A DNA stretch of 64,000 bases from Macrostomum lignano (GCA_002269645.1 NIVC01002343.1:46555-110554); one strand, 5' to 3'; counted from the first letter of the stretch, positions 9,535 to 62,843 are shown. The notes: generated from the letters alone by a model not told the origin. Numbers and translations: made by a program.

Positions 9535-9581
<47 letters not shown>

Positions 9582-9604
9582 CTATCTATCTATCTGTCTA
9601 TCTA
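9290..9604. repeat. (TCTA)n microsatellite abutting the 5' end of the Helitron-like element
   Basis: Read directly; ends ...TCTA|TCCTATATAC. Confidence 0.97.
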
Positions 9605-16314: not shown

Positions 16315-16376
16315 TTAGGGTTAGGTTAGGGTTAGGGTTAGGGTTAGGGTTAGGGTTAGGCTAGGGTTAGGGTTAG
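16315..16376 (+). repeat. Interstitial telomeric-type (TTAGGG)n tract, ~10 units
   Basis: TTAGGG TTAGG TTAGGG... read directly; a degenerate paralogous tract lies at ~15895-15940. Confidence 0.9.
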
Positions 16377-28700: not shown

Positions 28701-31700
28701 GATCGCCCTCTAGATGCCATTGAGGATCGCCCTCTAGATGCCATTGAGGATCGCCCTCTAGATGCCATTGAGGATCGCCCTCTAGATGCCATTGAGGATC
28801 GCCCTCTCGATGTTATTGAGGATCGCCCTCTAGATGCCATTGAGTATCGCCCTCTAAATGTTATTGAGGATGGTCCTCTAGATGCCATTGAGGATCGCCC
28901 TCTCGATGTTATTGAGGATCGCCCTCTAGATGTCATTGAGGATCGCCCTCTAGATGTTATTGAGGATGGTCCTCTAGGTGCCATTGAGGATCGCCCTCTA
29001 GATGCCATTGAGGATCGCCCTCTAAATGCCATTGAGGATCGCCCTCTAGATGCCATTGAGGATCGCCCTCTAGATGCCATTGAGGATCGCCCTCCAGATG
29101 CCATTGAGGATCGCCCTCTAAATGCCATTGAGGATCGCCCTCTAGATGCCATTGAGGATCGCCCTCTCGATGTTATTGAGGATCGCCCTCTAGATGCCAT
29201 TGAGTATCGCCCTCTAAATGTTATTGAGGATGGTCCTCTAGATGCCATTGAGGATCGCCCTCTCGATGTTATTGAGGATCGCCCTCTAGATGTCATTGAG
29301 GATCGCCCTCTAGATGTTATTGAGGATGGTCCTCTAGGTGCCATTGAGGATCGCCCTCTAGATGCCATTGAGGATCGCCCTCTCGATGTTATTGAGGATC
29401 GCCCTCTAGATGCCATTGAGGATCGCCCTCTAGATGCCATTGAGGATCGCCCTCTAGATGCCATTGAGGATCGCCCTCTAGATGTTATTGAGGATCGCCC
29501 TCTAGATGCCATTGAGTATCGCCCTCTAGATGTCATTGAGGATCGCCCTCTAGATGTCATTGAGGATCGCCCTCTAAATGTTATTGAGGATGGCCCTCTA
29601 GATGCCATTGAGTATCGCCTTCTAGATGTTATTGAGGATGGTCCTCTAGGTGCCATTGAGGATCGCCCTCTAGATGCCATTGAGGATCGCCCTCTCGATG
29701 TTATTGAGGATCGCCCTCTAGATGCCATTGAGTATCGCCCTCTAAATGTTATTGAGGATGGTCCTCTAGATGCCATTGAGGATCGCCCTCTCGATGTTAT
29801 TGAGGATCGCCCTCTAGATGTCATTGAGGATCGCCCTCTAGATGTTATTGAGAATGGTCCTCTAGGTGCCATTGAGGATCGCCCTCTAGATGCCATTGAG
29901 GATCGCCCTCTAGATGTCATTGAGGATCGCCCTCTAGATGCCATTGAGGATCGCCCTCTAGGTGCCATTGAGGATCGCCCTCTAGATGCCATTGAGGATC
30001 GCCCTCTCGATGTTATTGAGGATCGCCCTCTAGATGTCATTGAGGATCGCCCTCTAGATGCCATTGAGGATCGCCCTCTAGATGCCATTGAGGATCGCCC
30101 TCTAGATGTTATTGAGGATCGCCCTCTAGATGCCATTGAGTATCGCCCTCTAGATGTCATTGAGGATCGCCCTCTAGATGTCATTGAGGATCGCCCTCTA
30201 AATGTTATTGAGGATGGCCCTCTAGATGCCATTGAGTATCGCCTTCTAGATGTTATTGAGGATCGCCCTCTCGATGCCATTGAGGATCGCCCTCTCGATG
30301 TTATTGAGGATCGCCCTCTCGATGTTATTGAGGATCGCCCTCTAGATGTCATTGAGGATCGCCCTCTAGATGTCATTGAGGATCGCCCTCTAAATGTCAT
30401 TGAGAATGGCCTTGGCATCTCGAATTGCAACTCTGGCTGCCCGCAGGTGCAAGAGTAGCCTGGTGAACTATCGCCAGGTGGCGGCCCACCTGCTGGCCAG
30501 CAACAACTTCGCCAAGTTCCCCAAGGACCTGCAGATCGGCATCCAGCTGGCCGCCAGGTCCCAGCAGAGCGGCGATCCCGACTCGCAGATTCGCCGAGCC
30601 GGCGAAGGCGAAATCAACGAAGAGGCGGCCGTCCCGCCGGAGGGCGTACAGGACGCGGTGTTCTTCATCTTCAACAACCTGAGCAAGATAAACATGAGCA
30701 CCAAGTCGGAAGAGCTGCGCAGAGCCGTCCCGGACGAGTTCATGCCCTGGCTCGGCCAGTACCTGGTGATGAAGCGAGTCACCACCGAGCCAAACTTCCA
30801 TCAGCTGTTCGTAGACCTGATGGACGCGCTGAATGTGCCCCGCCTGCGCGAGATCGTCCTGCAGCAGACCTTCCGCAGCATCCGCGCCCTGCTGCAGAAC
30901 ATGCGCCCGGACCTCAACGACTACAACGATCGCTCGCTGCTGAAAAACATCGGGCACTTTCTGGGCCTGCTCACCCTAGCAAAGAACCGGCCAATCCTGT
31001 TTGACGACATGGACCTGAAGGGCCTGCTGTTGGAGGCCTATTGCAAGGGCCAGGTAGAGATGCACTACGCCGTGCCGTTCGTAGCCCGCACTCTGGAGGC
31101 CTGCTCCCTGAGCCCCGTGTTCCGGCCGCCCAGCCCCTGGACCATGGGCATCGTCCGTGTGCTCAAGGAGCTGCACATGGACAAGGCGGTGAAGAACTCG
31201 CTCAAATTCGAAGTGGAAATCCTGTGCAAGAAGCTGGAAATCAACTTTGACCAGCTTGATCCCGCCTACTACTTGCGCGATAGCGACCGAATCCGCCAGA
31301 TCGAAGTGGAGAACTGCCTTATCCGGGGCTCCGCTGCCGGCGCCCGCGGCTCTGCAGCCGCACCGTCCACCGCCGCTGAGCACGAGCAGCAGCTGCCGCC
31401 CAGGATGACCGCCCCAGCCGAGGAGTTCGAGCCGCAGCAGCCGCTGCCGCCGCCGTCCCAGCAGCAGCTGCCGCCTCAGATGCACCTCGACCCGTCAGCG
31501 TTGCAGCTCATGCAGCAGCAGGGCGGCATGAACCCGCCGCTGCCGAGGTTCAAGTGGACCGACATCGAAACCAGTCGACCGCTAAGCGCCTTCTTCAACG
31601 TGAATCTCGGCCTCCCGCTGCTTCAGGCCAGCCCAGGCCTGGCCAGCGGCATCCGACAGACCCTGGAGCTCACAGTCGGCGAGCTGATGGAGCCTGTGGC

Positions 31701-34700
31701 TCAGCGCTGCGTTCGGATCGTCCTCGGCACCGTGGAGGGCGTCGTGCGCAAAGACTTTGCCCTGGACGACGACGAAAGCCACCTTAGGTCGGCGGCGCAC
31801 AACATGACCCGCTGCCTGACTGCCGGCATGGCCCTCATCACCTGCCGAGAGGCGCTGAGCGTCAACATGGAGACCAAGCTCAAGCAGCAGTTCATGCAGG
31901 GCCTTAGCTCTCCCACCGCCCATCAGCGCGAGTTGATCGAGGACGCCGCCCGCGTCATCGCCCAGGACAACTTCGAGCTGGGCACGGCCTACATACAGAA
32001 GGTGTGCGTTGAGAAGGCCCTGGTGCAGGTGGACGTGACCCTGGAGACCGAGTACCGGCTGCGCATCCACGCCCGGCAGGAGGGCAGGCGGTACTTCGAC
32101 CAGCAGCAGCTGAGCTACCAGAACGAGTTCATGCCGCCCCTGCTGCGCAAGGCCGTGGGGCCACCACCGCTCAACAGCCTGGCCGTGTACTCCGAGTACG
32201 CCAACTGCGTTCCCGGCTTCGCCAGTGACGCTCCGCCCGCCGTTCCTCCGCCCATGCCGGCCATGGCCGCCGCCCAGCCTTCGCAGCCGCCTCAGCAGCC
32301 ACCTCCGCAGGCGTCGCAGGTGGCCGCACCGGCGCAGCCGCAGCACCGCAACGAGGTTGCCCAGCTGTTCGACACCATCGTGGCCGAGGTTGAACGGCAG
32401 TCGCAGTACATCGCCAACTCGTCCAGCCTGGCTACGCCAACTTCAACAGCCGCGGCCGGTGCCGGCATCGGGGACAGCGCCCAGCTGGTGCAGCGCCTCC
32501 GCGTGCTGGTCGAGCGGGCCAAGCGTGCCAAGTCGTCCGCCAACGACGCTTACGCTAGCAAAGTGGTGGAGGCGGCCGTCCAGTCGCTGTTCCAGACGTT
32601 CCGGCGCCACCCAATGCAGGCGCAATTCCCCCAGGAGGTGCTGGAGCGCTACAAGGAGGCGCACACTGTGGTGCTCAGGCTGATGTACCAGCCCAAGCTC
32701 AGCGGCCTGGGCTACTCCAGCTGCATGAGTCACGTGGTGACGCAGATCTGGACGGACATGCCGGAGCCGCAGAAGTGGAATAGCGACGCCTTCATCGAGC
32801 TACTAAAGATTCACATCGTCAGTCTGCAGGCTGTGGACTCGCACCTGGCCAAGCAGATCCGGCAGAGCAACCTGCGAGCCCTGCGGTTTGTCATGGACCT
32901 GTTCCACGCGCTGGTGCTCAACGACAGCCGGGAGCAGACTGTGCTCAACGAGTGCGACCTCACCGGCACCATCGCGGTGATCGCCCATCTGATTGAGAAG
33001 TCTCCGCCAGATCACGTGCCCAGGGAGTACGTCCAGGTCTACCACCAGGTGCGCGGCCTGCTGGACTTTGGCCTGCTGGAGGCCCACCAGCAGCCCGCCA
33101 CCACCTATCTGTACAGCGGCTGCTCCCAGGCCAGGGAGTTCGACGATCCACACTGGCTGCAGGAGGCCAGCGAGAACCTCATGAAGAAGTGGTACACCAT
33201 GTACAGCACCCAGCGGGTGGTGGACCAGCGCGGGTTCAACACCTTCGTGAAGGATATGACGACGTTTGGAATACTAAAGACCGACGATATCATTACTAGG
33301 TAAATCTGTGGCTTTATAATATGTACTCTTAAATAATCTGAGATTCAGGATCTCATCTGCCCCATAGTCGCACCTGAGATTCAGATCTGCCCCCATAATC
33401 TGCATCTGAGATTCAGGATCTCATGTCTGCCACATAATCTGCATCTGAGATTCAGGATCTCATGTCTGCCACATTATCTGCATCTGAGATTCAGGATCTC
33501 ATGTCTGCCCCATAATCTGCATCTGAGATTCAGAATCTCATGTCTGCCCCATAATCTGCATCTGAGATTCAGGATCTCATGTCTGCCCCATAATCTGCAT
33601 CTGAGATTCAGGATCTCATGTCTGCCCCATCATCTGCATCTGAGATTCAGGATCTCATGTCTGCCACATCATCTGCATCTGAGATTCAGGATCTCATGTC
33701 TGCCACATAATCTGCATCTGAGATTCAGGATCTCATGTCTGTCCCGTAGTCTGCACTTGGGATACAAAACCATCAACTTCAAAGCGTTCCTCATTAGACT
33801 GCCAAACTTAGACTTGCTTAATTCAGCCATATCCTCCCCGAATCACTGCTCCACCCCTCCCACCGCTGCAGGTTCTTCCGGCTGACCACCGACTACGTGA
33901 TGGAGCACTGCTTCCGCGCTCTGCTCAAGTCCGGTCAGGAGGTCCTTGGCAACCGGGTCAGCTGCTATCAGGAGCTGGACGCCTACATCCGCCTCATCGC
34001 CGTGATGGTGAAGCACAGCGGCGAGCATGGGGCCGCCGCAGACATAGAGAGACAGCGAGAGCGCGAGGGCAGCGCCAGCACGAAGATCAACCTGCTGAAC
34101 AAAATCCTCGGCATCATTTCCGGCACCCTGCTGCAGGAGCAGGACATCCGGTCTGACCGGTTCCACCCGATGCCCTTCCAGCGGATCTTCATCCTTCTGT
34201 TCAGCGAGCTGCTCTCCCCGGCCACCGCCGATGCTGACAGCCCGCAGATCAACACCCTGACCACCTTGACCGTCCCCATGCTGGCGGCCTTCGCCAATGC
34301 GCTGCACATCGTCAGGCCTGCCAAGGCGCCGTCCTTCACCTACAGCTGGGTAAGGCGCTTGCTTTATGGCTTCTTCACTGACACCGGCCGTTTTGCGTTC
34401 TCTGGCCGCCGCCAGATCCTCAGTTGCTGGGCCACCGCCACCTCACTCCCAGATCCTCAGTTGCTGGGCCACCGCCACCTCACTCCCAGATCCTCAGTTG
34501 CTGGGCCACCGCCACCTCACTCCCAGATCCTCAGCTGCTAGGCCACGGCCACCTCACTCCCAGATCCTCAGCTGTTGGGCCACCGCCACCTCACTCCCAG
34601 ATCCTCAGCTGTTGGGCCACCGCCACCTCACTCCCAGATCCTCAGTTGCTAAGCCATCGCCACTTCACTCCCAGATCCTCGCTGGGCCACTGCCCCCCCC

Positions 34701-37700
34701 CTCCCAGATCCCCTAATGACTTTGCCACCCTCTTGGGTCGCGTATCAGTTTCCCAGTGCCAGCACCGCATCCTCACCAGCGCCCCAACCTGCGCACCCCC
34801 AGGTGGAGTGCATCTCGCACCGGTCCGTGCTGTCCAAGTACCTCGGCAACCAGGCGGCCTGGTCCATGTACGCCCAGCTGCTGGTGGACCTTCTGAAGTT
34901 TATCGCGCCATTCCTGGCCACCGCCAACTTCATCAAGACTGTGCACCTGCTGTACCGCGGCACCCTGCGCCTCATCCTGGTGCTGCTGCACGATTTCCCG
35001 GACTTCATCAGCGAGTATCACCATGCCCTGTGCGACGTGATCCCCGCCAACTGCATCCAGCTCCGCAACCTCGTCCTGTCCGCCTTTCCCAAGTTCGTGC
35101 AGCTGCTGGACCCCATCCAGAGCCCGGCCTCGCAGTGCTGCGCCCTGCCGGAGATGCAGCAGGAGCCGCGCGGCTCCTTCGCCGGCCTGGAGACCAACAT
35201 CCCCGCCAAGCTGCGCGAGGAGGTTGACGGCTTCCTGGCCACGCGGAAGCCGGTGCAGTTCCTCACGGACGTGCAAAGCCGCATCCGGGCTGACGACGGC
35301 GAGGAGGGCCGGCGCTACCACGTCGAGCTCACCAACGCGCTGGTGCTGTACGTCGGCAGGCGGGCCGTCAAGCGGATCAACGAGAGCGGCAACTCGCTGC
35401 AGCCGTACAACATGACTCACTGCGTTGAGACCGAGACCCTGCAGGCTCTGGTCATGCTGTGCTGTACCGAGGGCCGCTACCTGCTGCTCAACGCCATGGC
35501 CAATCAGCTGCGCTATCCGAACTCGCACACCTTCTACTTCAATCAGATCCTGTTGTTCTTCTTCCGCGAGAGCAACAACGAGCAGATTAAGGAGCAGATT
35601 ACCAGGTGATTACATAACTTGATTAAAAACCCAAATGGTGTTCAGTTGATAAACTGTTTAATGGTTTCGTTTGCTAGCAGAACCAAGGGTGTTACAGAAG
35701 GATCCTAGGGTGTTACAGAAGGATCATAGGCCCTAGGGTGTTACAGAAGGATCATAGGCCCTAGGGTGTTACAGAAGAATCATAGGCCCTATGGTGTTAC
35801 AGAAAAATCATAGGCCCTAGGGGTGTTACAAGAGGATTCTATGGTGTCAGAAAAGGCTGCAAGGGGAAACGTGGGGCAGCCACAGTAAGTAAAACTAAAG
35901 CTGGAATCACTAAATGGCATCCTTCAGCTGATTTCAATCTCGAGCCCGCCTTCCCCCCCCCCCCCGAACCGCAGGGTGCTGCTGGAGCGCCTGATCGTGA
36001 ACCGGCCGCATCCGTGGGGTCTCCTGCTGACCTTCACCGAGCTGCTGAAGAATCCCAGCTACAAGTTCTGGGATCACGAGTTCGTGCGCTGCTCGCCGAG
36101 CATTGAAAAGTGAGTCAGCTATCGGAGCTTGAAATTTGTTATTTTGCCTGTGTCACAGGGCTATTCACCTGGGCCTGTGTGTCACAGGGCTATTCACCTG
36201 GGCCTGTGTGTCACAGGGCTATTCACCTGGGCCTGTGTGTCACAGGGCTATTCACCTGGGCCTGTGTGTCACAGGGCTATTCACCTGGGCCTGTGTGTCA
36301 CAGGGCTATTCACCTGGGCCTGTGTGTCACAGGGCTATTCACCTGGGCCTGTGTGTCACAGGGCTATTCACCTGGGCCTGTGTGTCACAGGGCTATTCAC
36401 CTGGGCCTGTGTGTCACAGGGCTATTCACCTGGGCCTGTGTGTCACAGGGCTATTCACCTGGGCCTGTGTGTCACAAGGCTATTCACCTGGGCCTGTGTG
36501 TCACAAGGCTATTCACCTGGGCCTGTGTGTCACAGGGCTATTCACCTGGGCCTGTGTGTCACAAGGCTATTCACCTGGGCCTGTGTGTCACAAGGCTATT
36601 CACCTGGGCCTGTGTGTCACAAGGCTATTCACCTGGGCCTGTGTGTCACAGGGCTATTCACCTGGGCCTGTGTGTCACAAGGCTATTCACCTGGGCCTGT
36701 GTGTCACAAGGCTATTCACCTGGGCCTGTGTGTCACAGGGCTATTCACCTGGGCCTGTGTGTCACAAGGCTATTCACCTGGGCCTGTGTGTCACAGGGCT
36801 ATTCACCTGGGCCTGTGTGTCACAAGGCTATTCACCTGGGCCTGTGTGTCACAAGGCTATTCACCTGGGCCTGTGTGTCACAGGGCTATTCACCTGGGCT
36901 CTTGTGGCCTGAAAACTGATTAATAATCTTGCCACATACTGCAATCACTGCTGGCCATTGCGCTTTCCCCGGGCCCGCTGCGTCAGCCATAAAAGCCTGT
37001 CCTAATTGGTTGGCTAAACTAATTGGATTGAAAACCTAATCAAATCGGTGCGGGACCCAAGTGTAGCTGCGATGAAGGCGAGCTGGGATTCTGTGCAGGG
37101 CTTGTCAGTCTCTGGGCAGCACTGTTTATTCGGCCGCAATCTGGGCTTCGAGCGGCGCATTGTCTGCGTGTCCCCAGCTGTCCCGGCTGCTCCGGCCAAT
37201 AATCTGGCCAAATTGCATCGTAAAAACATTATATTTCTGCTTCAAGGAAACACTGCTATCGCTTGCTTGCGTCCATAGACCTGCCGCTGTGCCACTTTCA
37301 GTTTCCTGGCTGGGCTGGGGGGGCAGCTCAGTGATGGCGATAATAATGAGAATGCTCAAGCACTGAGCAGCTTTCCGTGTGTGTACCCCCTGTGAATGCC
37401 CACTTTATTTCCCTTTTCTCATAATTTTCATTCTCTTCATTCCTTATTTGATTCGATAATGAACTGTGCCTCTCCGGCCAAAATAACACCTGGGGGCTTT
37501 GCTAATTACATGACTACTGTGCTCACATTGAGAATTTGTCCACATTGTTTGCATTTTCTCGGCGTGGATTCGAAGTCCGGGATCTGAGGGTTGAGACTGC
37601 ACCTGGGAATCTGGGAGTTGAGACTGCATCTGGGGATCTGAGGGTTGAGACTGCACCTGGGAATCTGGGGGTTGAGACTGCATCTGGGAATCAGGGGGTT

Positions 37701-40444: not shown

Positions 40445-40990
40445 CTTACACCTTACACCAAATCGGTCTCAGGACCCGCTCCTTACACCAAATCGGTCTC
40501 AGGACCCGCTCCTTACACAAAATCGGTCTCAGGACCCGCTCCTTACACAAAATCGGTCTCAGGACCCGCTCCTTACACAAAATCGGTCTCAGGACCCGCT
40601 CCTTACACCAAATCGGCTTCAGGACCCGCTCCTTACACAAAATCGGCCTCAGGACCCGCTCCTTACACAAAATCGGCCTCAGGACCCGCTCCTTACACAA
40701 AATCGGTCTCAGGACCCGCTCCTTACACAAAATCGGTCTCAGGACCCGCTCCTTACACCAAATCGGCTTCAGGACCCGCTCCTTACACCAAATCGGCTTC
40801 AGGACCCGCTCCTTACACCAAATCGGCTTCAGGACCCGCTCCTTACACAAAATCGGCCTCAGGACCCGCTCCTTACACAAAATCGGCCTCAGGACCCGCT
40901 CCTTACACCAAATCGGCTTCAGGACCCGCTCCTTACACCAAATCGGCCTCAGGACCCGCTCCTTACACCAAATCGCACTCAGAACCCGCT
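40445..40990. repeat. 30-bp minisatellite, ~18 copies (CCTTACACAAAATCGGTCTCAGGACCCGCT)
   Basis: Direct tandem copies. Confidence 0.96.
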
Positions 40991-41591
40991 CTGCATGGCA
41001 TCATCGTATGCTTCCTTGGAAAAGCATATTGCATTTTTTGACCATTCGATTCTTGCGAAAACTTTGATTTCATTCGTTATGAGACTTTCTCTGTTTGATA
41101 ATGTCCAAATTGACTGCCTGGCGGCCTCAAAGAGATGAGGAAAAAGCAGCTGTAAAAAGAATCGCACACGTGTCAGTCCAATGCATTTCGCCCTGGGTGG
41201 TTGTATTTAATCGTGGCGTGAAAAACACGAACTAACTTCACTGATGCTGAGCCTTTTGATGTGGTCTGGTTGCTTTTGCATTTGCCTTCTCTGCTCATTT
41301 TCCTTGACGCTTGCCGCCATCGCTTTGAGTCTCCCCTGCATCTATATTGAGCATTAGCGACTGGTCCTATATCAGCCCAACGTCATATCCCATCTCACAT
41401 CCCATCCCCAAATCCCATCTCACCATATTCTCATATCCTATCTCAAATCCCATTCCCATGTCTCATCTTATCCCATTCCCTTATCCCATCTCACATCCCA
41501 TTCCAATATCTTATCCCGCATCCTATTCTGATCTCACATCCCGTTCCCATGTCTCATCTCGCATTCCATTCCCATGTCTCATCTCCTCCCA

Positions 41592-42025: not shown

Positions 42026-44806
42026 CGCTGAGTGTATGTGTAGGGTGCACCGGGCAGTGCAGGCACGCACGTACATGTAATTATGTTTAGCGGTAAGCGT
42101 TTCCTGAATTCTGAGTAGCGCAGCGCAGACCTTCGTACATTTTTATCCATTATTATCTCTCCCCTGTCAGTGCTGTTCGTTATCCCATTTTCTTATCCAA
42201 CAGGTCTTGTATAGGAGTTTCTTCCCTTAGTTTAGGGATCAGGACTTGTCTGCGCTGAGCCGAGACCCCCCACTTGGCTGTTCGCATGACTGCCGGAGAC
42301 GCACCGCAGCGGCCGCGCCCGTTTGTCCCCCGCAATTCCCAAATGAAGTTATGCGGATTTTCTTCGATGCGTCGCTTTTTTCCTCTTCCCCTTTCTTGGC
42401 GTCGAAATTATGGTTGTCGAGCTTCCAGCTACAGGGAGCAATCATAATTCGATTGAGCGCACAGACCCCAGTTTGTACAGTTGTCCTTTGGCAGTGACTA
42501 TCTCATCTTGTTAGCTAATTTGCTTTGTAGGCGAGACTGTTTCAGGTGCTGCAGAAGGCGATCGCGCCGCGGAATGGACTCAGCCGCAGTGCAGGCACAC
42601 ATTTGAAAAGCCAGTTTGAAGTCACCACCAGTCAAGACAGAGTCAAGATATTCAAGGAATATTTTAGATTATGACTTTGCTATTTTATATTTTAACTCAT
42701 AAACAAAATGGTTCGAGCGTCAGAAATAGATATTTTTGTTATAAATGGTGCGAAATTAAAGCTAGCCGAGTACATCCCGTGGCTCTGTTCCAGCCAGGAG
42801 GCAAATCTCATCAGCTCCTGCAGATTCAACTTTAAGCGTCTTGGAAGTGGGATGGCGGTATCGCATACAAGACCAAAACAGTGACGTGCAGACTGGATTG
42901 GGGTTGGGGCAGGGAATGTACACGGATAGCTAATGTACAGAGCCGGGCTGGCCAGAGCCGGGTGAGTGGGTGGGCATGTCTACCCAAACAGCCAGGGGCA
43001 GAAAACATAAGAGTGGAGTTGGGGTGGCGGCATCACGTGACCCAGGCCCAGACAGACGTGGACTCTAGGATGGTGGGTGGTTGTGAATCGCTGCTAAAGT
43101 GCAAGCGATTTCGTGAGCGTGCAGACAGTTGGTGCCTTGGTGAGTGGTCGCGTTATCAGCTGTTTATCAGAGTATCTGTTTATCAGATCTGGCCATCAAT
43201 CAAATCGCCAGATGTACATTAACTTTTAATGTGTGCATCTAAGGCTCGTTCATAAAAAAAGCCAACAAATCACAAAGTGCACATGATTCCCAGTTCGAAC
43301 GGACCTTCAGTAGCGCAGGCGCATCTCGGCACAGGTTACACGCCTCAGACACCTTGACATTTATTCATCATATTAACATCTACTGAGTGACTGAGTCCCA
43401 TGTTCCCTCAAAATGTAATGCAACTTTTGTAATCCGCCCGAAGGAAGTATACGTTTACGAGTAACTAATCTGGAGCATTTAACTCATCTCAATCCTTAGA
43501 ACAGTGTATTACTGGTTTTGTCATAATAAATACATGTAGCTCCGACTCATTTGTTCCCTTCTCTTGAGTTTTTCCCATCGTTGCCCAATTACAAAGCAAT
43601 TATGAATTAATTTGAATTCCAAGAAGAAAAACGGCTCTGCACGTTATGTGCTTTTGATAAATTAATTTCTCTCATACCTTTGCTTGTCATTAACAGCACG
43701 GCGCAATCTCCTTACTCTTTCTAATTGATCAGTGCAGTCAGGCAGGTTGAATTTGGGTGGCTGCATCGCTTCGTCTCCACCCACCGCCAACCTCGGCCTC
43801 CGCAGCGCCATCACTGGCGGAGAGGAGGCTGGATGGCCGCGCCCGCCCCAGCCTCCTGCAGCGGCCTCCTATATTTTTACTCGGTAAAAGTCGGCCGTCA
43901 GGAAAGTCGCCGATAAAGGAAGGAAGCGCACTCAGCCCTCAACCTCCGCCAGCGACTGCAGCAGCCCGACTCCGCCAGCCTTGAATAAAGTCAGGTGAGA
44001 AAGTTGCTTCAGCAGGCCAGAGAGACCCAGAGAGTATCAGAGAGCGGCTGCACTCGCTCAATACTGAGTGAGCAGACTGCGGGCAGCTGCAACTGACTTT
44101 AGACACTAATTGAGAACAATTAATAAGGGCCAGGGAGTCGATATGCACAGAGGTCTCCTTGCCAGTCGATATGCAAATGAAAAGCCTGGCTGGGCGGAAA
44201 GTCGCCTTCAATGCCCAGCAACACAGCGAAGGTCTCCGATGGGATCTATAGATAGCTGTGGGCCGTGTCCGCGCCCTCTGTTGCCGCCATGATGAGCAGC
44301 TCTCCCGATCCGCAATCAGCTTGTCCTGCAGCCAACATCGTCTCCGTTTATCCCCTGCAATCGATACCTCAGTAATCTCTTGTCTGCCGCGGATCTTTAT
44401 GGCCCCGGGATATCAGCCGCGGTCTCGAACCCGACTCAAATGAAAAATTCATCTGCAAAGCAGCCGCTTGCGCAGAATTTTTGCTGAATTCTGACTTGAA
44501 CTGCAGGCATGTCCGCTTGCGGTCTCGCGTGCGCTATGGTTGCTTATAATGAGGCTGAATAATTAATTAGCCCCAACCAGGGCTGCTGCATCCTCTCAAT
44601 GAGTCCGCGCAGTTTTCTAAGCCTCTTGAAGTTTTTTCTTGGCTAACTTTTTTGAGGCGCATCTTAGCGATTGGAAACAATTAGTCGTACAATTTTGCTG
44701 CCATGAATTCACGTGAAACTGTCTTTTGTCCCTGTCTAACTGACAAAAACCTCCTTGCAGAACCCAAGACGAAAATAGACTGTCTATCTACTGAAGCCAC
44801 GCTGAA

Positions 44807-45713
44807 ATGCGCCACAATTCCACCTGCCGGATTGGCCTGGCCTGCCTGATGGCCTTTCTGCTCTGTGCTGGAGTGACCCACTGCGAGGTGCGTGACGGGC
44901 TGGGTGACTGGCTGGGTGACTGGCTGGGTGACGGGCTGGGTGAGAAGCTGGATAAACTTGACCTCAAAGAAAACTCGCCTGTGAGCAAGGCATCCGGCCT
45001 CTGTGCAATGCCAGCAAGCGTCTGAGTTCTGTTTCAGTCACGCAGTCGGCGAAATGACGGCGAAATTTAATGTCATTTAAATGCCGACAGTTAAATGACA
45101 GCAATTTGCATTTCCAACAGGAGAATTCCATTAAGGCTCTGGAAGAAACGTTTTAGGGAGTTTAGCGATCTGAAAGTGACTTCAAAGTGCAGATTTGGAG
45201 ATTTAGTTTCGCTACAATTGATCTTAAAACTGATCTCTCCAGATGCCCGACTCCAAAGCCATGGAAGATGACAGTCGGGATGAAGAGAAGAGGTTCGACC
45301 CGCTGATGATGAAGAAGTTCGACCCGCTGATGATGAAGAAGTTCGACCCGCTGATGATGAAGAAGTTCGACCCGCTGATGATGAAGAAGTTCGACCCGCT
45401 GATGATGAAGAAGTTCGACCCGCTGATGATGAAGAAGTTCGACCCGCTGATGATGAAGAAGTTCGACCCGCTGATGATGAAGAAGTTCGACCCGCTGATG
45501 ATGAAGAAGTTCGACCCGCTGATGATGAAGAAGTTCGACCCGCTGATGATGAAGAAGTTCGACCCGCTGATGATGAAGAAGTTCGACCCGCTGATGATGA
45601 AGAAGTTCGACCCGCTGATGATGAAGAGGTTCGACCCGCTGATGATGAAGAAGTTCGACCCGCTGATGATGAAGCGCAGGTTTCTCCGCAAGCTTCACCG
45701 CCTGCACGAGTGA
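44807..45713 (+). CDS. Neuropeptide precursor (183 aa): signal peptide, acidic spacer, 16x FDPLMM flanked by KK/KR
   Basis: Exon 44807-44887 encodes MRHNSTCRIGLACLMAFLLCAGVTHCE (hydrophobic signal peptide), with donor GAG|GTGCGT. Phase-0 acceptor CTCTCCAG|ATG at 45243 gives MPDSKAMEDDSRDEEKR(FDPLMM-KK/KR)x16...RFLRKLHRLHE*. Confidence 0.88.
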
Positions 45714-51819: not shown

Positions 51820-52270
51820 GACCCGTTCATAACTGCTTCTTGTGACTGACTTACTGTAACCGACTTGATGTGTGAGTATTCAATTATAAGTGCTTCAATT
51901 CAGATCATCAGTTCGAAGAGAGCTGGACTAGATCTGAACACACTGAACTGCTAATGTAGCGACCTGGTTTCAAATTTTTAAAGTGTATACATTTTTATCA
52001 AAATTATTTTAAATGTCAAGAGCTGTAAACTCCACGAAAAACTAAAGAATAAGGAAGCGTCATGTCAAACATAAAAAGCGTCATGTCAAACATAAAAAGC
52101 GTCATGTCAAACATAAAAAGCGTCATGTCAAACATAAAGGAAGAGTCATGTCAAACATAAAAAGCGTCATGTCAAACATAAAGGAAGAGTCATGTCAAAC
52201 ATAAAAAGCGTCATGTCAAACATAAAAGAAGAGTCATGTCAAACATAAAAGAGGCATCATGTAAAACATG
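51820..52270 (+). mobile_element. Diverged fragment of the same Helitron-like family, with ~9 shortened (~21-bp) monomers
   Basis: CATAACTGCTTC, GAGAGCTGGACTAGATCTGAACACACTGAACTGCTAATG match ~6830-6975; followed by (AAGCGTCATGTCAAACATAAA)n at ~52055-52265. Confidence 0.7.
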
Positions 52271-52547
52271 AAAAAAACCTCGACGCAGCTGGCGTGTCAA
52301 GGTATCGACTTTGTCAGACATCAATGGCAAACAGGTTCTGTGCGTTTTATTTTTACTGACGCTCGGACATTGCAAATTTTGCTTTTCTCTCCGTCTCAGG
52401 TGCTTTCTACTAGCGAAATTTAACATACACATTTGCCATCGATGTCGGCTTGTTGTCCGGAATGTACTGTGCATCTGTAGTTACTCTGTCATTTATCCAG
52501 AGACTGTAGAAGGGCGCAGTGTGGTCCATCAGCTCAGGTACAGATGC

Positions 52548-57330: not shown

Positions 57331-58246
57331 TTCTTCCCTTTTACGATTCTCCATTATTTTCTTGAAACACACCAGGCTAGACTCGTCTTCTTTGCTAATC
57401 TCTGAATCTAGTCGCGCCGGGCGGATCTTGGAAAAGCTCTGGTCCTGGACAAATTGTTGTCTATCTGTTTTAATTTTTTGACTCGCTTAGAAAATAATTA
57501 TTCGTTCCATTATGAAAATGGTGCCTGAATTTGAAAATTATGAAAATCTAATTTGTGAATAGTAATTTTATTAATTGCGAGAAGAACGCCTTCCGCAATA
57601 TTCTTTTAAGTTGTCTTGTCTACAGGAAAGTACATCAATGCACTTTCGAATGCTACGAGCGTAGCTACTCAATTGAATAAAGATTTCAACTGGATTCGAC
57701 CTTCAACCATCAGACTAAAAACAACTGAACTCATTTTCAACAAACGCAGCTATTTCTACTTATAGTAGTTCGTAGCAAAATAGTGCAGTTTGTATCTACG
57801 TGTACTGTTTCGCTATAACTGCTTCATTATTCTGACCATTTGTATAATATACTGTCACCCAAACACCATCACACATGACTTCTTTCCCACACGTTTATTA
57901 TTCATCAACTCTTCCTTACATTGGCCTGAAAAAGGTGGAATAATGGCCACGAATGTGTGGAATATTGGCCTTAAATGTGTGGCATCTGTGCTGGACAAAA
58001 TGCAGATAAAATGCACTTGTTTAGCATGCAGCTTGACTGGAAAACTCGGACGCTACGCGCGCTCGTATTTCGGCTCGAGCTCGGCTACATGCCTGCCATT
58101 GGCTGAGCTCTTCTACCCAATCAAATTCTGTTCGCGCATTTAAACCGCTCTCACTCGTAATTTTCTCTCCGTTTCGCTCAAGCCTCTCCAAATGAGATCG
58201 AAAGCTGCCCCTACAGTTTGCTCAGCTTGTGCTGTCTGAGTTGAAA

Positions 58247-61200
58247 ATGCTCCAGACAATTCTGTTGCTGCTCATGCAGACTGCTGGCAAGTATGCGGAA
58301 CAGAGAGACAATGACTGCTCATCTCAGCTCAGCGCAGCCATATTAAATGGCAACATTGAAACCGTGGACAGTTGCCTGGTCAGACATGTCGACGTCAACA
58401 GGCTCGCGCCATTCAAAGGCAGCTGGCTGGCTCCTGTGCATCTCGCGTGTGCATTCGGACAGAGGGAGATTCTCGATAAGCTAATAAAAGCAGAAGCCGA
58501 TGTTGACCTTCAACTCAGCAACGGGATGTCGGCCCTCTTCATCGCGTCTGGTAATGGGCAGGTGGAAGTTGTGGACTTGCTCATCAAGGCTCAGGCGGAT
58601 GTGAATCTTCGGGAAGCAAGCGGGCGCTCGGCCCTCAACGTCGCCTCACAAGAGGGCCATTTCCAGGTAGTGGAATCCCTGATCAAAGCGCATGCGGACC
58701 CCAACTTACAAGACAATGCAGGCTATTCACCTGTTTTTATCGCATTGCATTGCGGGCACCAGAGAGTGGTGAAGTCCCTGCTTAAAGCGAGTGCGGATCC
58801 CAACTTGGGCAGGAAAGATGGTGTCTCATCTTTGCACATCGCATCGCAACTGGGCGCTAAAGATGCGATGCAACTTCTTGTCAAAGCACTCGTGGATCTT
58901 GACATTCAGGAAGCACATGGCTGCACACCTCTTTACTTGGCATCGCAGAGCAACAGCATGGAAGTAGCGAACTGCCTACTGACCGCACAGGCGGATCCGA
59001 ATCTCCAGGTCGTTAGTGGAATTTCACCTCTGGCATTCGCAGCTCAGAAAGGCGGCTGTCGGGTAATTGAGGCGCTCTTGAAAGGGCGCGCTAATGTCGA
59101 CATTCAAGAAGTCTATGGCGCGCGCCGCTGTACGTTGCCTCCGAAAATGGCCATCACCAAATTGTAGACTTACTCATCAAGTCTCAAGCAAGCATCGATC
59201 TTCAAGAATTGAGGGGTCGGACGCCTCTCTACATTGCAGCAGAAAATGGTCACGAACGGGTGGCAAATTTTTTATTGAGGCCCAGGCCGATGTAAACCTG
59301 CAAGAAATTGAAGGGTGCTCGCCTCTCTTCATTGCCTCACAGCAGGGGCATCACCGAGTTGTCAATCTGCTCATTAAGACGCAGGCTGACGTCAATTTGC
59401 AGGGAATCGGTGGAGGATCGCCTCTCTTCATAGCATCGCAGAATGGTCATTGGGGAGTGGCTGAATCCCTCATAAATCAGAATGCCGACGTCAACCTGCT
59501 AACAGACGAGGGGATATCACCGCTTTATATCGCCGTGCAGAATGGCTACTACAGGATAGCTAAACAACTGATTGAGGCCGATGCCAAAGTCGATCTTCAA
59601 GAGAAGCACGGTCGCTCTGCCCTTCACATTGCAGCATATTCCGGTCAACGCTTAGCGGTAGAGCTGCTCATCAAAGGCCAAGCGGATGTCAACCTTCGTG
59701 AAAGCGACGGATCTTCACCTCTATTTGCGGCAGCATTGCGGGGACACCACAGTGTAGTAAGCGCTCTTATCGAAGCCAAGTCAGAAGTCGATTCCGTGCA
59801 AAGGACGGTGCAACTTCGCTCTTTGTTGCCTGTCAAAATGGTTTTATAGAAGTAGCGCGCTCGCTAATCAAAGCTCGGGCTGATGTTAATCTCCAGAGAG
59901 ACAATGGTGCATCGCCACTCTACACTGCCTCCGAAAACGGACATACCGCAATGGTTGAATTGCTGATCATGGCGCAGGCTGATATTAATCTTCAAAGGAA
60001 AAACTGCATGTCGCCACTGTACATTGCTTCTCAGAATGGAAATTGGCAAGCGGTGGACTTGCTAATCAAAGCGCTCGCTAATGTCGATGCCGTCAGTGAC
60101 ACTGGGTCTTCACCTATCTTCACCGCTTCTCAAAATGGCCATCATCGAGTAGTGCGCTTACTTATTAAGGCTAATGCAAGTGCTAATCAACAACTCCTCA
60201 ATGGCTGCTCTCCCCTGTACGCTGCATCGGAAAGCGGTCATCGGCAGGTCGTTGGGCTGTTAATTAAGGCTCAAGCCGACGCCAACTTGCCCAGTAGGAA
60301 TGGCTGCTCACCTCTTTTCGTGGCTTCGCAGAACGGCCACGAGCAAGTAGTAAAACTGCTCATAGAAGCCGGGCCGACGTTAATCTTCAAGACATCGAAG
60401 GACGCTCAGCCCTCTTCATTTCCTCACAGCAGGGTCATCATCAAATAGTGGAAAACCTCATCAAAGCAGAAGCTGATCTAAATGCTCAAGATTTTCAAGG
60501 CTGTTCACCCCTATACATCGCATCGCAGCAAGGGCATTCAAAAGTTGCACTTTCGCTGATAAAGGCAAACGCGGACGTGAACCAGCAAAAGCATGACGGA
60601 GTGACGCCACTTCATATCGCATCACAGAACGGTTTCTCTGAAATCGTGGAAGCCCTGCTCGAGGCAAGAGCAGAAGTCGGTCTTTATCTGAATCAGGTCA
60701 GTCGGCTCTAACGGCTGCATTTCATGGTGGCCATCGTGCTGTGATGTCTCTACTGATCAAGTCAATGGGAGGCAGGATAGTTCCCAATACAGGTAGTGTC
60801 GTCTCAAAAACAGGCTCTGCTAATTTCTTTGACGAGTTACTTTCGGGGTGAGTTTATTGCGAGCGTACATAAATTCGCTATAAAAGTTAAATAGGAATTA
60901 CAAACACGATTAAAACTTGTTAATTTCCATCTCCTAGCAAACTTTGCTCACTGATAATCCTCTTCATTTTTCAGGTCGGCTCTCGTTGAATACCGACTGA
61001 GCCAGCGGCTCTCTTCTGCTCTGTGTAAGTCAGGATTTGTTGATTCCAGAGCCGCCCTACAGAGTGCAGTCGCCGATGTCTTGCAAGCAATACTGCAGAA
61101 TCGGCGGTCGGACAAGTCCTTTGTTGTCGGAAGCTACTCAGAAGGCTGGGGCAACAATCTGAAGACGCTGGATGGCCGGACGGACTCGGAGTCCGATATT

Positions 61201-62843
61201 GACGTGATGAGTCTAATTCCTGGTAGGCTGTACCATCTGAGGGGCATCTGCAGTGCTGATTGTAGCGATGCGAAGGAGCACGTAGATTACATTAACGGCC
61301 ACGTAAAAATACCCGGATATGGTAAATAAGCAAACAATTTGTGTTGAAACCAGCAGTATCTGAGTAAAAAATTTCTGCAGTAGAATTTCGTTTACATTTT
61401 AGCCTCCAGCCCAGCGACCCCCTTTCACGGATCTTCACTCAAGCCAGCCGTGGATCAGGTCGATGCCAGCTGTCTCTGCCGCTACCCGCCCATCGCTCCT
61501 CTTCAGCCTGACAGAGTCATCAAATCCAACATCCCTCAGCACCTACTGGAGTCACTGAGGCAGGAGCTGCTGGCTTCGCCATGCCACGTGGTCCATGCTG
61601 CTTCTCCAGGTCAAGACGGCGAACAGCTTCGTGTGAGCACCACATTCCTAGAGAAGCGAATGCTCAGAAGTCTCTCCACCCTACAGGGCCAGCTATTTAT
61701 CGTACTAAAGTATTTGATTAAGAAGATTATTTCAAATAAATACGGCTTCAACGTGGCGGATTCAAGTCTTATCATGCCAAAACTATCACATTCCGAATGG
61801 TGGAGGAAACACCAAGGGAACTGTGGAAGCCAGAAAACCTCTTGAGCCTCGTGAGAAGATCGCTGCACATGCTACTTGACTGTGTGGAAAGCAGTCATAC
61901 CCCCGATAATGCTCATGGCCGGGTCATGAACCACTTCTTTCTGTGCAATGCAGACATTTACCTAAAAGGAGTGGAGCAGAAGGGTAGTGGTGTGAGCGCA
62001 GCTTTTGAAAAAGCCGCAGTTACCCTGAAAATTGTGATCGACTACCTGCCCCAGCTGCTGCTTCAGTTCCAAAGCAGTCTGAAGCCGGCCAGCAACTCCG
62101 GCAGGTTCTACTTTCACCCGTTCCTCCTCTTGCCACATTTCTGCATGTCCCAGAGACCCGCGTTGAGTTCTGGCAGCCTTGAATTTCACGAGATCTACTA
62201 TGTGGTCAGAGAAGCCATCGAGCGACTTTCTCACGGAGACTGTGGCAAGGAGTCCCAAGAGACTCTCACAGCACTGCTTGCCAGACTGCCAGACTGCGCC
62301 TTCTCAGCTCGAGAAGCACTCAGAATTGTTGCCAGTCTGAAATTCGGCTACCGAAGCACCGCGAAGAGAATAATTGACAACTGCAGGGGCCATGTAGTGA
62401 GCCGCGGCATCGACTGGTCCACTGAAAGGACCGCAACTGACGCCACCGTTGAGTTCGTGTGGCGACATCTGAAAAGTCGAGACTCACTGTGGAGATTTTG
62501 CTTTGAATTCAGCCAGCGACCGCATTAGTAAGAGAATTGTCTGCGGATATCTCAAGTGCTTTCCCATCAGGATGAGCAACTACGAGACATATTTCTATGT
62601 GAACTTCGACGCTCTGCTGCAGTCGCTTCGCCTGGAGTTGTGTGGAGTTGGTGACGCGGATGCGCTGGACTGGATCCGGGATATGGCCCGGCGTGAGGAT
62701 GCGGATGAGCAGGAGCTGCTATCAGCTGCTCTCTACTCACCGACTCCGAGCAGGTAGCGTCACTAACACTGAAGCTGAGACACCTGGTCGGCCCAGTTCC
62801 CGCCTGGTTTCTGGACCGCCTGGCAACCAAATGGCGGCTGTAG
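58247..62843 (+). CDS. Ankyrin-repeat / cGAS-like receptor (Mab-21-family nucleotidyltransferase) fusion; multiple apparent frameshifts
   Basis: ~25 ankyrin repeats (GxSPLxIASxNGH...) at ~58320-60750. Introns ~60793-60974 and 61322-61402. NTase motifs VVGSYSEG...SDIDVM and a probable third Asp in DQVDA...RYP. Mab-21 motifs CHVV, LRVSTTFLEKRML, LKYLIK, GFKSYHAKT, EETPRELWKPENL, MNHFF. Final frame ends LDRLATKWRL* at 62843. About 10 single-base frameshifts must be assumed. Confidence 0.82.

What the first reader, a model, noticed from the sequence alone, without database searches (positions are those of the whole stretch)
44807..45713. Neuropeptide precursor producing 16 identical non-amidated FDPLMM peptides, disguised as a 24-bp minisatellite
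Seen: the 24-bp repeat AAGAAGTTCGACCCGCTGATGATG looks like the surrounding junk arrays. However, a signal-peptide exon 355 nt upstream splices into it in phase 0, and the repeat is preceded by an acidic spacer and KR. Every copy lies between dibasic sites and none has a Gly amidation donor. Established: signal peptide + acidic spacer + dibasic-flanked repeats is the prohormone architecture. Inference: the FDP-hydrophobic core recalls pedal-peptide/orcokinin-type peptides and flatworm FDPIxF-type peptides (from memory). The non-amidated, Met-Met-ending form and the near-perfect DNA homogeneity suggest a lineage-specific family expanded by the same slippage process that makes the intronic arrays.
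Basis: partly seen in the sequence, partly recalled or inferred. Interest (0 to 1): 0.72.

Follow-up and report, generated by a model that had tools for sequence, protein, structure and literature searches.

The report
Flatworm FDPLMM neuropeptide precursor gene
The 24-bp "minisatellite" is the coding body of a real, spliced two-exon gene of the flatworm Macrostomum lignano that should be cut into 16 copies of the secreted hexapeptide FDPLMM. It most likely belongs to an already known flatworm neuropeptide family (planarian SPP-15, schistosome NPP-26), so it is a sound but fairly ordinary find.

Summary
There are 16 exact FDPLMM units (45294-45671), each preceded by KK or KR and none with Gly. 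Upstream lie an acidic spacer ending in KR and a 27-codon signal-peptide exon (44807-44887), joined through a 355-nt phase-0 GT..AG intron.

It is not a chance ORF. The unit uses only the genome's most preferred codons. The exon-1 Met is the only non-repeat signal-peptide-like start in the window. No other array in the window shows this pattern.

GenBank PAA57848.1 (Macrostomum lignano, "hypothetical protein", from a transcript-derived annotation) carries exactly the predicted exon junction. Its own genomic locus also has 16 units, and all variants there are synonymous or K<->R. A M. lignano paralogue encodes FDPLIM repeats behind an unrelated pro-region.

The peptide fits the flatworm F-D-P-[I/L]-x-hydrophobic family. 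Schmidtea SPP-15 gives FDPIQFamide x8, confirmed by mass spectrometry and expressed in the CNS. Schistosoma NPP-26 gives non-amidated xFDPILF-OH, also confirmed and a neuron marker. So it is not a new lineage-specific family, and the orcokinin/pedal-peptide link is unsupported.

Neuronal expression and the mature peptide remain untested in Macrostomum. Verdict: new member of a known kind, with moderate to low interest.

The parts
44807..44887 (+). Exon 1: start codon plus 27 codons, MRHNSTCRIGLACLMAFLLCAGVTHCE. This is the signal peptide: n-region with R2/R8, a 15-residue h-region IGLACLMAFLLCAGV, and c-region T-H-C.
   Evidence: Sequence read. It is the only non-repeat signal-peptide-like Met in six frames of the window. 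Mean Kyte-Doolittle value of the h-region is 2.55. It is 81/81 identical in locus L001 and forms the N-terminus of PAA57848.1.
44888..45242 (+). Intron, 355 nt, phase 0, from GTGCGT to TCTCTCCAG. It contains a 12-bp repeat (GTGACTGGCTGG, 44892-44943).
   Evidence: The splice sites resemble the CNOT1 junctions in the same window (AG|GTAAAT, AG|GTGATT, CTGCAG|G, CCGCAG|G). The junction matches P0083/PAA57848.1. The 12-bp repeat has 4.3 copies here and about two fewer in L001 (24-bp gap in the alignment).
45243..45293 (+). Start of exon 2: acidic spacer MPDSKAMEDDSRDEE followed by the first KR cleavage site.
   Evidence: The spacer differs at two residues (K->E, A->D) from L001/PAA57848.1, while the peptides do not differ.
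45294..45671 (+). 16 x FDPLMM (TTCGACCCGCTGATGATG), separated by KK (13 spacers) or KR (one spacer, before copy 15). This is the peptide-coding array, previously readable as a 24-bp minisatellite.
   Evidence: CAI is 1.0 in this frame. L001 also has 16 units, and its 8 differences are all synonymous or K<->R.
45672..45713 (+). C-terminal tail KRRFLRKLHRLHE plus the TGA stop. KR closes the last copy, and a basic tail follows.
   Evidence: It is 42/42 identical in L001 and identical in PAA57848.1.
44545..44569 (+). Candidate promoter elements about 240 bp upstream of the ATG: TATAAT (44545-44550) and the palindrome TAATTAATTA (44560-44569, homeodomain-site-like). This is inference only.
   Evidence: Read. 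Both are conserved in L001 although neighbouring bases differ. No functional test was made.

Best explanation
This is a real, transcribed two-exon gene of Macrostomum lignano or a very close relative. It encodes a 183-aa preprohormone.

**Proposed mechanism**
1. The 26-27-residue signal peptide directs the protein into the secretory pathway.
2. A prohormone convertase (PC2-type) cuts after each KR or KK.
3. A carboxypeptidase E-type enzyme removes the basic residues.
4. This releases 16 copies of the free-acid hexapeptide FDPLMM, an acidic N-terminal spacer peptide and a short basic C-terminal tail. There is no Gly, so there is no amidation.

The peptide is the macrostomid version of the flatworm F-D-P-[I/L]-x-hydrophobic family: planarian SPP-15 (FDPIQF/FDPIMF-amide) and schistosome NPP-26 (xFDPILF/IIY-OH). 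It is therefore most likely released by a small set of neurons as a neuropeptide.

**What is shown:** gene structure, splice junction, coding signature, a paralogue with a conserved peptide, and motif-level fit to the known family.

**What is inferred:** cleavage at KK/KR, the mature peptide, neuronal expression, and common descent with SPP-15/NPP-26.
For: - **Architecture and coordinates** are as described.
- **Chance controls** favour a real gene: a unique signal-peptide-like start, a unique in-frame dibasic array, and CAI 1.0 in the peptide frame with coding GC3 of 0.80.
- **The splice sites** match the local consensus.
- **An independent protein record exists.** P0083 = PAA57848.1, BOX15_Mlig023240g1 of M. 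lignano, has the identical 27-aa exon 1 fused to MPDS... exactly as predicted. The Mlig_3_7 annotation behind it is built only from RNA-seq and de novo transcripts.
- **Its genomic locus L001** has 16 units: 8 canonical, 4 KR, 2 GAC>GAT and 2 CCG>CCA. All variants preserve the peptide and the dibasic site.
- **Copy number is stable here only.** It is 16 in both loci, whereas the intronic 12-bp array and the 30-bp array at 40451-40991 differ between them.
- **A paralogue keeps the peptide.** P0096 (M. lignano) has FDPLIM x7 and FDPLII behind KR/RKR sites with an unalignable pro-region.
- **The known family is well documented.** Smed-spp-15 is a signal peptide, a spacer, then KR-FDPIQFG x8 and FDPIMFG. 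It is confirmed by mass spectrometry and expressed in cephalic ganglia, ventral nerve cords and pharynx.
- **Sm-npp-26 peptides** are confirmed by mass spectrometry as free acids, and the gene marks a neuron cluster in miracidia.
- **KK cleavage occurs in flatworms.** Planarian peptides such as KK.FRGLLa and ...QRF.KK were detected by mass spectrometry.
Against: - No expression pattern, peptidomics or SignalP run is available for this gene in Macrostomum.
- Similarity to SPP-15/NPP-26 rests on a 3-5-residue core repeated many times, so the BLAST E-values are inflated by the repetition. Nothing outside the repeats aligns.
- Position 6 is Met or Ile here, not the Phe/Tyr of the known members.
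- 14 of the 17 cleavage sites are KK, which is generally a weaker convertase site than KR (from my own knowledge).
- Selection evidence within the array is weak. There are three variant types, all transitions. The chance that all three preserve the peptide is about 0.006 if all substitutions are equally likely, and about 0.05 if only transitions are counted (my calculation).
- The exons are not more conserved than the flanks, because the two loci are only 1-2% diverged.
- No AATAAA lies within 1.2 kb of the stop.
Confidence: 0.72

Rival explanations
1. Processing is the same (signal peptide, dibasic cleavage, 16 x FDPLMM), but the family arose independently in macrostomids. On this view the resemblance to SPP-15/NPP-26 is convergence on a short motif.
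For: Only F-D-P plus an aliphatic residue is shared. The pro-regions do not align. Nematode precursors with KRFDP[YFL]x units score as well or better, which shows the motif recurs in distant phyla. The last residue is M/I, not F/Y.
Against: Three flatworm lineages share several features: a hexapeptide or hexapeptide core, the same F-D-P-[I/L] start directly after or close to the dibasic site, a hydrophobic position 6, tandem near-identical copies, and a short precursor of 120-190 aa. FDPIMF and FDPLMM share 4 of 6 residues, and a fifth is I/L.
Confidence: 0.2
2. It is a secreted repeat-peptide precursor made by non-neural gland cells, such as prostate or seminal-fluid glands, adhesive or pharyngeal glands. 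The peptide would then act as a pheromone, ejaculate component or defence peptide rather than a neuropeptide.
For: The architecture shows only regulated or furin-type secretory processing, not the cell type. Smed-spp-15 is also seen in unidentified sub-epidermal cells. Sm-npp-26 shows weak signal in apical gland nuclei. No expression data for this gene were found: the gene identifier is absent from two supplementary data sets and from full-text searches.
Against: The closest characterised relatives are CNS-expressed and serve as neuron-cluster markers. A small acidic hydrophobic hexapeptide is an unlikely antimicrobial or adhesive (inference).
Confidence: 0.12
3. It is a non-coding minisatellite with a fortuitous open frame. 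On this view the GenBank gene model is an artefact of reads mis-mapped onto a repeat.
For: One third of the window is tandem arrays. Five of the six frames through this array are open. The units are 99% identical, so within-array selection cannot be shown strongly. The GenBank model has a collapsed copy number, 5 against 16.
Against: The signal-peptide exon is unique in the window and in phase. The same junction appears in a transcript-derived model. CAI is 1.0 in only this frame. All variants preserve the peptide. A paralogue has a different pro-region but the same peptide core. Copy number is stable while neighbouring arrays vary.
Confidence: 0.03
4. It is an orcokinin/pedal-peptide-type precursor, as the first reader suggested as an alternative.
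For: It shares an F-D start after a dibasic site, and both types are non-amidated with many copies (from my own knowledge of that family).
Against: The peptide is 6 residues long, not about 13-15, and has no C-terminal G-F-type motif. No Pfam family passes threshold for the precursor. A closer flatworm family exists.
Confidence: 0.03

Closest known systems
Smed-SPP-15 (Schmidtea mediterranea secreted peptide prohormone-15, GenBank BK007013; Collins et al. 2010, PMC2953531)
   Same: Both are short precursors with a signal peptide, a short spacer ending in KR, and then tandem identical hexapeptides that start F-D-P-[I/L]. SPP-15 has FDPIQF x8 and FDPIMF x1. FDPIMF and FDPLMM share 4 of 6 residues, with I/L as a fifth. 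The SPP-15 peptides are confirmed by mass spectrometry, and the gene is expressed in cephalic ganglia, ventral nerve cords and pharynx.
   Different: The planarian units end in Gly and are amidated, with an aromatic Phe at position 6, KR sites only, and 9 copies. Here there is no Gly, position 6 is Met, most sites are KK, and there are 16 copies. The pro-regions do not align.
Sm/Sj-NPP-26 (Schistosoma mansoni Smp_071050 and the S. japonicum orthologue)
   Same: Both give non-amidated free-acid peptides with an FDPI[L/I/A][F/Y] core between KR sites. The Sm-NPP-26 peptides are confirmed by LC-MS/MS (NFDPILF-OH, SYFDPILF-OH, SYFDPIIY-OH, EHFDPIIY-OH). The gene is a unique marker of one neuron cluster in miracidia. 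Collins et al. already paired it with spp-15.
   Different: The schistosome copies are few (about 5), differ from one another, and carry 1-2 extra N-terminal residues. Position 6 is aromatic. The precursor also has a long N-terminal region containing another predicted peptide.
M. lignano paralogue UniRef A0A1I8HH48 (P0096, partial; labelled 'PSCyt2 domain-containing protein')
   Same: It comes from the same species and has 8 tandem FDPLIM/FDPLII units after ERR, separated by KR or RKR. It is 66% identical to the window protein over the repeat region.
   Different: Position 5 is Ile rather than Met. The spacers are KR/RKR rather than KK. The pro-region is unrelated and longer. Only a partial model is available and its DNA could not be retrieved.
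Unnamed clade-V nematode precursors (C. angaria P0001; Nippostrongylus, Heterorhabditis, Pristionchus, Cooperia and Trichostrongylus, P0229-P0237)
   Same: They have a signal peptide and 6-12 tandem KR/KK-FDP-[Y/F/L]-x units without Gly. They were the only non-flatworm hits. The peptide at their C-terminal end contains an F/I-D-P-x-A-[F/Y] core.
   Different: The units are pentapeptides and vary. Most end in a conserved amidated peptide (NIFDPxAYxVGFG in the strongylid, Heterorhabditis and Caenorhabditis members; a divergent form in Pristionchus) that is absent here. They are in a different phylum, and homology cannot be told from a 3-residue motif. No source gives them a name.
Generic multi-copy prohormones and Kex2-processed repeat proteins (e.g. 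yeast alpha-factor; from my own knowledge)
   Same: The logic is the same: a signal peptide, a spacer, and many identical peptides between dibasic sites, which amplifies peptide yield per transcript.
   Different: There is no sequence relationship. This is an analogy of mechanism only.

Membership tests
Flatworm SPP-15 / NPP-26 (FDPIxF-type) neuropeptide precursors | N-terminal signal peptide on a short (about 120-190 aa) precursor | tested here: met
   The precursor is 183 aa. It has two Arg in the n-region, a 15-residue h-region with mean KD 2.55, and small residues at -3/-1 (T, C). It is the only such non-repeat start in the window. This is a heuristic, because SignalP was not available.
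Flatworm SPP-15 / NPP-26 (FDPIxF-type) neuropeptide precursors | Tandem peptide copies bounded by dibasic cleavage sites | tested here: met
   There are 16 units, each between KK/KR sites. Cleavage at KK has been detected by mass spectrometry in planarian prohormones.
Flatworm SPP-15 / NPP-26 (FDPIxF-type) neuropeptide precursors | Core motif F-D-P-I-x-[F/Y] | tested here: inconclusive
   FDPLMM and FDPLIM have F-D-P identical, L in place of I, and a position 5 (M/I) that falls within the known range Q/M/L/I/A. Position 6 is M/I rather than aromatic.
Flatworm SPP-15 / NPP-26 (FDPIxF-type) neuropeptide precursors | Detectable sequence similarity or shared gene structure beyond the repeated peptide | tested here: not met
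   BLASTP alignments consist only of the K[KR]FDP[IL] repeats. Intron positions of spp-15/npp-26 were not available. This feature is commonly absent even between true neuropeptide orthologues (my own knowledge), so it counts only weakly against membership.
Flatworm SPP-15 / NPP-26 (FDPIxF-type) neuropeptide precursors | Expression in neurons (CNS) and a mature peptide detectable by mass spectrometry | not testable with these tools
   This is known for Smed-spp-15 and Sm-npp-26. No expression or peptidomic data for Mlig023240 were found.
Expressed, spliced protein-coding gene (as opposed to a non-coding minisatellite) | Transcript evidence for the exon 1-exon 2 junction | tested here: met
   PAA57848.1 (P0083) reads ...VTHCE|MPDS... 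It comes from an annotation built solely from RNA-seq and de novo transcripts. The evidence is for the 98-99% identical locus L001, not for the window copy itself.
Expressed, spliced protein-coding gene (as opposed to a non-coding minisatellite) | Coding signature: frame-specific codon bias and variants that preserve the peptide | tested here: met
   CAI is 1.0 in the peptide frame only. All 8 differences between the two arrays are synonymous or K<->R. Statistically this is modest, p about 0.006 to 0.05.
Orcokinin / pedal-peptide family | Peptides of about 13-15 residues with an N-terminal FD-type and a C-terminal GF-type motif (my own knowledge) | tested here: not met
   The mature unit is 6 residues with no Gly-Phe motif. 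No Pfam family passes threshold.
Amidated neuropeptides | A C-terminal Gly before the basic site as amide donor | tested here: not met
   No unit has Gly. The peptide is therefore predicted to be a free acid, like the Sm-NPP-26 peptides.

The most novel reading that the evidence does not exclude
The FDP peptides are an ancient protostome signalling family. On this reading, flatworm SPP-15/NPP-26, the Macrostomum FDPLMM/FDPLIM genes and the unnamed clade-V nematode precursors all descend from one ancestral multi-copy gene and act on orthologous receptors. The nematode precursors carry tandem KRFDP[Y/F/L]x units and most end in an amidated NIFDPxA[F/Y]xxGF peptide. Macrostomum, an early-branching rhabditophoran, would hold the most expanded and homogenised copy.
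Probability: 0.15. Interest if true: 0.55.

Novelty: new member of a known kind. Interest (0 to 1): 0.33.

Why it matters
- **A functional assignment for an unnamed gene.** The M. lignano gene currently called "hypothetical protein" gets a specific, testable function. It also extends the SPP-15/NPP-26 peptide family from planarians and schistosomes to Macrostomorpha. That suggests the family dates to the base of rhabditophoran flatworms, and that the free-acid form is not a parasite peculiarity.
- **Experimental reach.** M. lignano is transgenic and amenable to RNAi, so the family's unknown function and receptor could be studied there. NPP-26 is of interest as a schistosome neuron marker.
- **A practical warning.** In a genome that is about one third tandem repeats, repeat masking and short-read transcript assembly hide or truncate multi-copy peptide genes. 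The GenBank model shows 5 copies where the DNA has 16. Neuropeptide inventories for such genomes are therefore probably incomplete.

Tried and rejected
- **Exact look-ups.** The exon-2 ORF and the unspliced 72-aa ORF are not on record.
- **First word-indexed protein search** with the full precursor found only a C. angaria protein and missed the M. lignano proteins. They surfaced only with the exhaustive HMMER search and the profile search.
- **CNOT1 search to identify the organism** gave at most 38% identity over 92% of the query, to vertebrates, and no flatworm, so it was uninformative. The species came from P0083/L001 instead.
- **Rfam and tRNA scans** of the window found nothing.
- **Pfam** found only a sub-threshold Cornifin hit for the precursor and nothing for P0001.
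- **Degenerate DNA pattern scan of metagenome contigs** gave 0 hits.
- **Full-text searches** for FDPLMM, FDPLIM, KKFDP/KRFDP, Mlig023240, the accessions and the nematode motifs returned nothing relevant.
- **Supplementary tables** of two M. lignano expression papers do not contain Mlig023240.
- **McVeigh et al. 2009 (PMC2749192)** is not held. I therefore could not check whether a Macrostomum npp-26 has already been listed.
- **DNA of the paralogue P0096** could not be retrieved.
- **Most of the 432 hits** are unrelated low-complexity repeat proteins. I checked this by motif count over the 150 listed.
- **Exon-versus-flank conservation** is uninformative because the two loci are only 1-2% diverged.
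- **No canonical AATAAA** lies near the stop.

Full report
**1. The observation**

- TRF reports an array at 45287-45674 with period 24, 16.2 copies and 99% matches.
- An exact search finds 16 copies of TTCGACCCGCTGATGATG (FDPLMM) from 45294 to 45671. Fourteen are preceded by AAGAAG (KK) and two (copies 1 and 15) by AAGAGG (KR). No unit has a Gly codon.
- An ATG at 44807 opens 27 codons, MRHNSTCRIGLACLMAFLLCAGVTHCE, which end at 44887.
- GT follows at 44888 and the tract TCTCTCCAG ends at 45242. The intron is therefore 355 nt and lies between codons.
- Exon 2 (45243-45713) reads MPDSKAMEDDSRDEEKR, then the array, then KRRFLRKLHRLHE and the stop.
- The spliced product is 183 aa.

**2. Is it more than chance?**

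An open frame through the array means nothing by itself, because five of the six frames are open there and a third of the window is tandem arrays. Three controls separate this array from the others.
- **Start codon.** Of 2725 Met codons in all six frames, five pass a simple signal-peptide filter. Four lie inside the 56.3-57.0 kb minisatellite. The fifth is 44807, which sits 436 nt upstream of the array on the same strand.
- **Array pattern.** Of 138 array-frames, 42 are open. Only two have a period divisible by three and a dibasic pair in every unit: this one and an Arg-rich frame at 2850-2961.
- **Codon usage.** The genome's exons (CNOT1 and an ankyrin gene in the window) have GC3 of 0.80. 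In the KKFDPLMM frame each of the six degenerate codons is the most-used synonym, giving CAI 1.0. The other four open frames give 0.22-0.76.

The donor and acceptor also resemble the CNOT1 junctions in the same window.

**3. Independent evidence and the organism**

The exhaustive HMMER search with the exon-2 ORF returned P0083, 95 aa and 97% identical.
- Its sequence begins with the identical 27-aa exon 1 joined to MPDS... at exactly the predicted junction.
- It is GenBank PAA57848.1, "hypothetical protein BOX15_Mlig023240g1" of Macrostomum lignano, encoded on NIVC01002440.1 of assembly GCA_002269645.1.
- That annotation was built only from RNA-seq (StringTie/TACO) and BLAT-mapped de novo transcripts (PMC5730564). 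The junction is therefore RNA-supported.
- The same paper reports that 15% of the genome is simple and tandem repeats, and that there are large near-identical duplicated blocks.

The fetched locus L001 compares with the window as follows.
- It is 98-99% identical in the flanks once indels are set aside. The window is therefore M. lignano or a very close relative, as another haplotype or duplicate copy.
- L001 also holds 16 units, not the 5 in the protein record. The record's copy number is a collapsed-repeat artefact.
- Its units comprise 8 canonical, 4 with KR, 2 with GAC>GAT and 2 with CCG>CCA. Every variant preserves FDPLMM and the dibasic pair.
- The two arrays differ at 8 of 384 positions, all synonymous or K<->R. 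The acidic spacer carries two amino-acid changes.
- With only three variant types, all transitions, the chance that all preserve the peptide is about 0.006 to 0.05 (my calculation). This is supportive but not strong.
- Copy number is 16 in both loci. In contrast, the intronic 12-bp repeat differs by two units, and the 30-bp array at 40451-40991 spans 541 bp here against about 826 bp in L001.

**4. A paralogue**

P0096 (UniRef A0A1I8HH48, M. lignano, partial) carries the tail of a hydrophobic leader and a long pro-region that does not align with this gene. That is followed by ERR-FDPLIM-RKR-... for eight units (FDPLIM x7, FDPLII x1). Its source name, "PSCyt2 domain-containing protein", is evidently wrong. 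A conserved peptide core with dibasic flanks next to free divergence elsewhere is the usual signature of selection on a processed peptide.

**5. How it most likely works**

These steps follow from the anatomy and from established prohormone processing. None of them was tested for this gene.
1. The signal peptide is removed near C26|E27.
2. A PC2-type convertase cleaves after KR and KK.
3. The basic residues are trimmed off.
4. Sixteen FDPLMM free acids are released, together with an acidic N-terminal peptide and a small basic tail.

Two published observations bear on this scheme. KK sites are used in flatworms, because planarian peptides flanked by KK were detected by mass spectrometry (SPP-12 and SPP-13). 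Separately, pc2 RNAi changes the peptide profile of Schmidtea mediterranea.

**6. Comparison with what is known**

Collins et al. 2010 (PMC2953531) pair Schmidtea spp-15 with Schistosoma npp-26.
- **Smed-SPP-15** is a signal peptide, a spacer of about 20 residues, then KR-FDPIQFG x8 and FDPIMFG. The amidated and Gly-extended peptides were detected by mass spectrometry. The gene is expressed in cephalic ganglia, ventral nerve cords, sub-epidermal cells and pharynx.
- **Sm-NPP-26 (Smp_071050)** yields NFDPILF-OH, SYFDPILF-OH, SYFDPIIY-OH and EHFDPIIY-OH, confirmed by LC-MS/MS as free acids. It is the unique marker of one neuron cluster in the miracidium, with in situ signal in about six neurons.

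FDPLMM and FDPLIM fit F-D-P-[I/L]-x-hydrophobic, and FDPIMF and FDPLMM share 4 of 6 residues plus I/L. The differences are Met or Ile rather than Phe/Tyr at position 6, mostly KK sites, and 16 copies rather than 9 or about 5. Nothing aligns outside the repeats, and the BLAST E-values are inflated by repetition. I therefore rate membership as likely, not proven. The absence of amidation is not new for this family. The orcokinin/pedal-peptide idea finds no support (and the peptide length).

**7. Nematode look-alikes**

The only non-flatworm relatives found are unnamed precursors from clade-V nematodes: Caenorhabditis angaria, Nippostrongylus, Heterorhabditis, Pristionchus, Cooperia and Trichostrongylus.
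- They have a signal peptide and many KR/KK-FDP-[Y/F/L]-x units without Gly.
- Most end in a conserved amidated peptide of the NIFDPxAYxVGFG type; the Pristionchus members have a divergent C-terminal end.
- I found no paper text containing these motifs.
- Whether this is shared ancestry or convergence on a short motif cannot be decided here. It is the basis of the "novel case".

**8. Verdict**

- The finding is a genuine gene and almost certainly a secretory multi-copy peptide precursor.
- It is best read as the Macrostomum member of the flatworm SPP-15/NPP-26 family, so it is a new member of a known kind.
- The gene is in GenBank only as a truncated "hypothetical protein".
- I could not check whether Koziol et al. 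2016 or McVeigh et al. 2009 already list it.
- Neuronal expression and the mature peptide remain to be shown.
- Interest is moderate to low. The main practical lesson is that coding peptide arrays are hidden or truncated in repeat-rich genomes.

Noticed in passing
window 24172-36110 (+): This is a CNOT1 (CCR4-NOT subunit 1) gene with very large exons, one ORF of 969 aa. Its introns are packed with 24-39-bp minisatellites, for example 25984-26723, 28634-30411, 33386-33755 and 34412-34711. The best database identity was only about 38%, to vertebrates, and the word-indexed search returned no flatworm protein.
   Followed up: partly
window 1-64000: About 33% of the window (21.1 kb) is tandem arrays. 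These include (CTGT)n at 2-975 and an 8.4-kb 23-bp array at 7056-15454. The published M. lignano figure for simple and tandem repeats is 15% genome-wide.
   Followed up: partly
window 6431-7100 and 9605-10273: A 670-bp segment is duplicated at 99.85% identity. The second copy is embedded in the 8.4-kb 23-bp array, next to an (ATCT)n run at 9289-9606. A related 21-bp array (AAGCGTCATGTCAAACATAAA) lies at 52055-52275, which suggests a dispersed satellite family.
   Followed up: partly
window 16315-16376: An interstitial telomere-type repeat, (TTAGGG) x10.7.
   Followed up: no
window 44892-44943 (intron of the FDPLMM gene); L001 about 5086-5110: A 12-bp repeat, GTGACTGGCTGG, starts 5 nt after the splice donor. 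It has 4.3 copies in the window and two fewer in L001. If the intron were retained, the frame would stay open for 45 more codons (…GDWLGDWLGDGLG…) and give a 72-aa secreted product.
   Followed up: partly
window 44545-44569 and 44750-44760: Upstream of the ATG lie TATAAT, a TAATTAATTA palindrome (homeodomain-site-like) and an acceptor-like CCTCCTTGCAG 46 nt before the start. The last could be a spliced-leader or 5'UTR acceptor. All are conserved in L001.
   Followed up: no
L001 5001-5872 (NIVC01002440.1, GCA_002269645.1): GenBank protein PAA57848.1 has 5 FDPLMM copies, although its own genomic locus has 16. This is a collapsed-repeat artefact of a transcript-based annotation. Other multi-copy peptide genes in this annotation may be truncated in the same way.
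   Followed up: yes
P0096 (UniRef A0A1I8HH48): The FDPLIM paralogue is labelled 'PSCyt2 domain-containing protein' in UniRef. A nematode relative (P0230) is labelled 'GLOBIN domain-containing protein'. Both names look spurious.
   Followed up: partly
window 2615-4396 (+), array 2850-2961: A 593-aa ORF without any Pfam match contains a proline run and a 21-bp array that reads APQAEDQ in frame. It is possibly a second case of a minisatellite inside coding sequence.
   Followed up: no
window 58229-60448 (+) and 61450-62528 (+): There is a multi-exon ankyrin-repeat gene (Pfam Ank_2, E = 1e-45), followed by ORFs with no Pfam match. Every recognisable gene in the window is on the + strand. This may relate to the polycistronic, trans-spliced transcription units described for M. 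lignano.
   Followed up: no
P0001, P0229-P0237; L002 (Logan SRR23622349): A family of clade-V nematode precursors is conserved but apparently unnamed. It has many KRFDP[Y/F/L]x pentapeptides, and most members end in a NIFDPxAYxVGFG-type peptide.
   Followed up: partly
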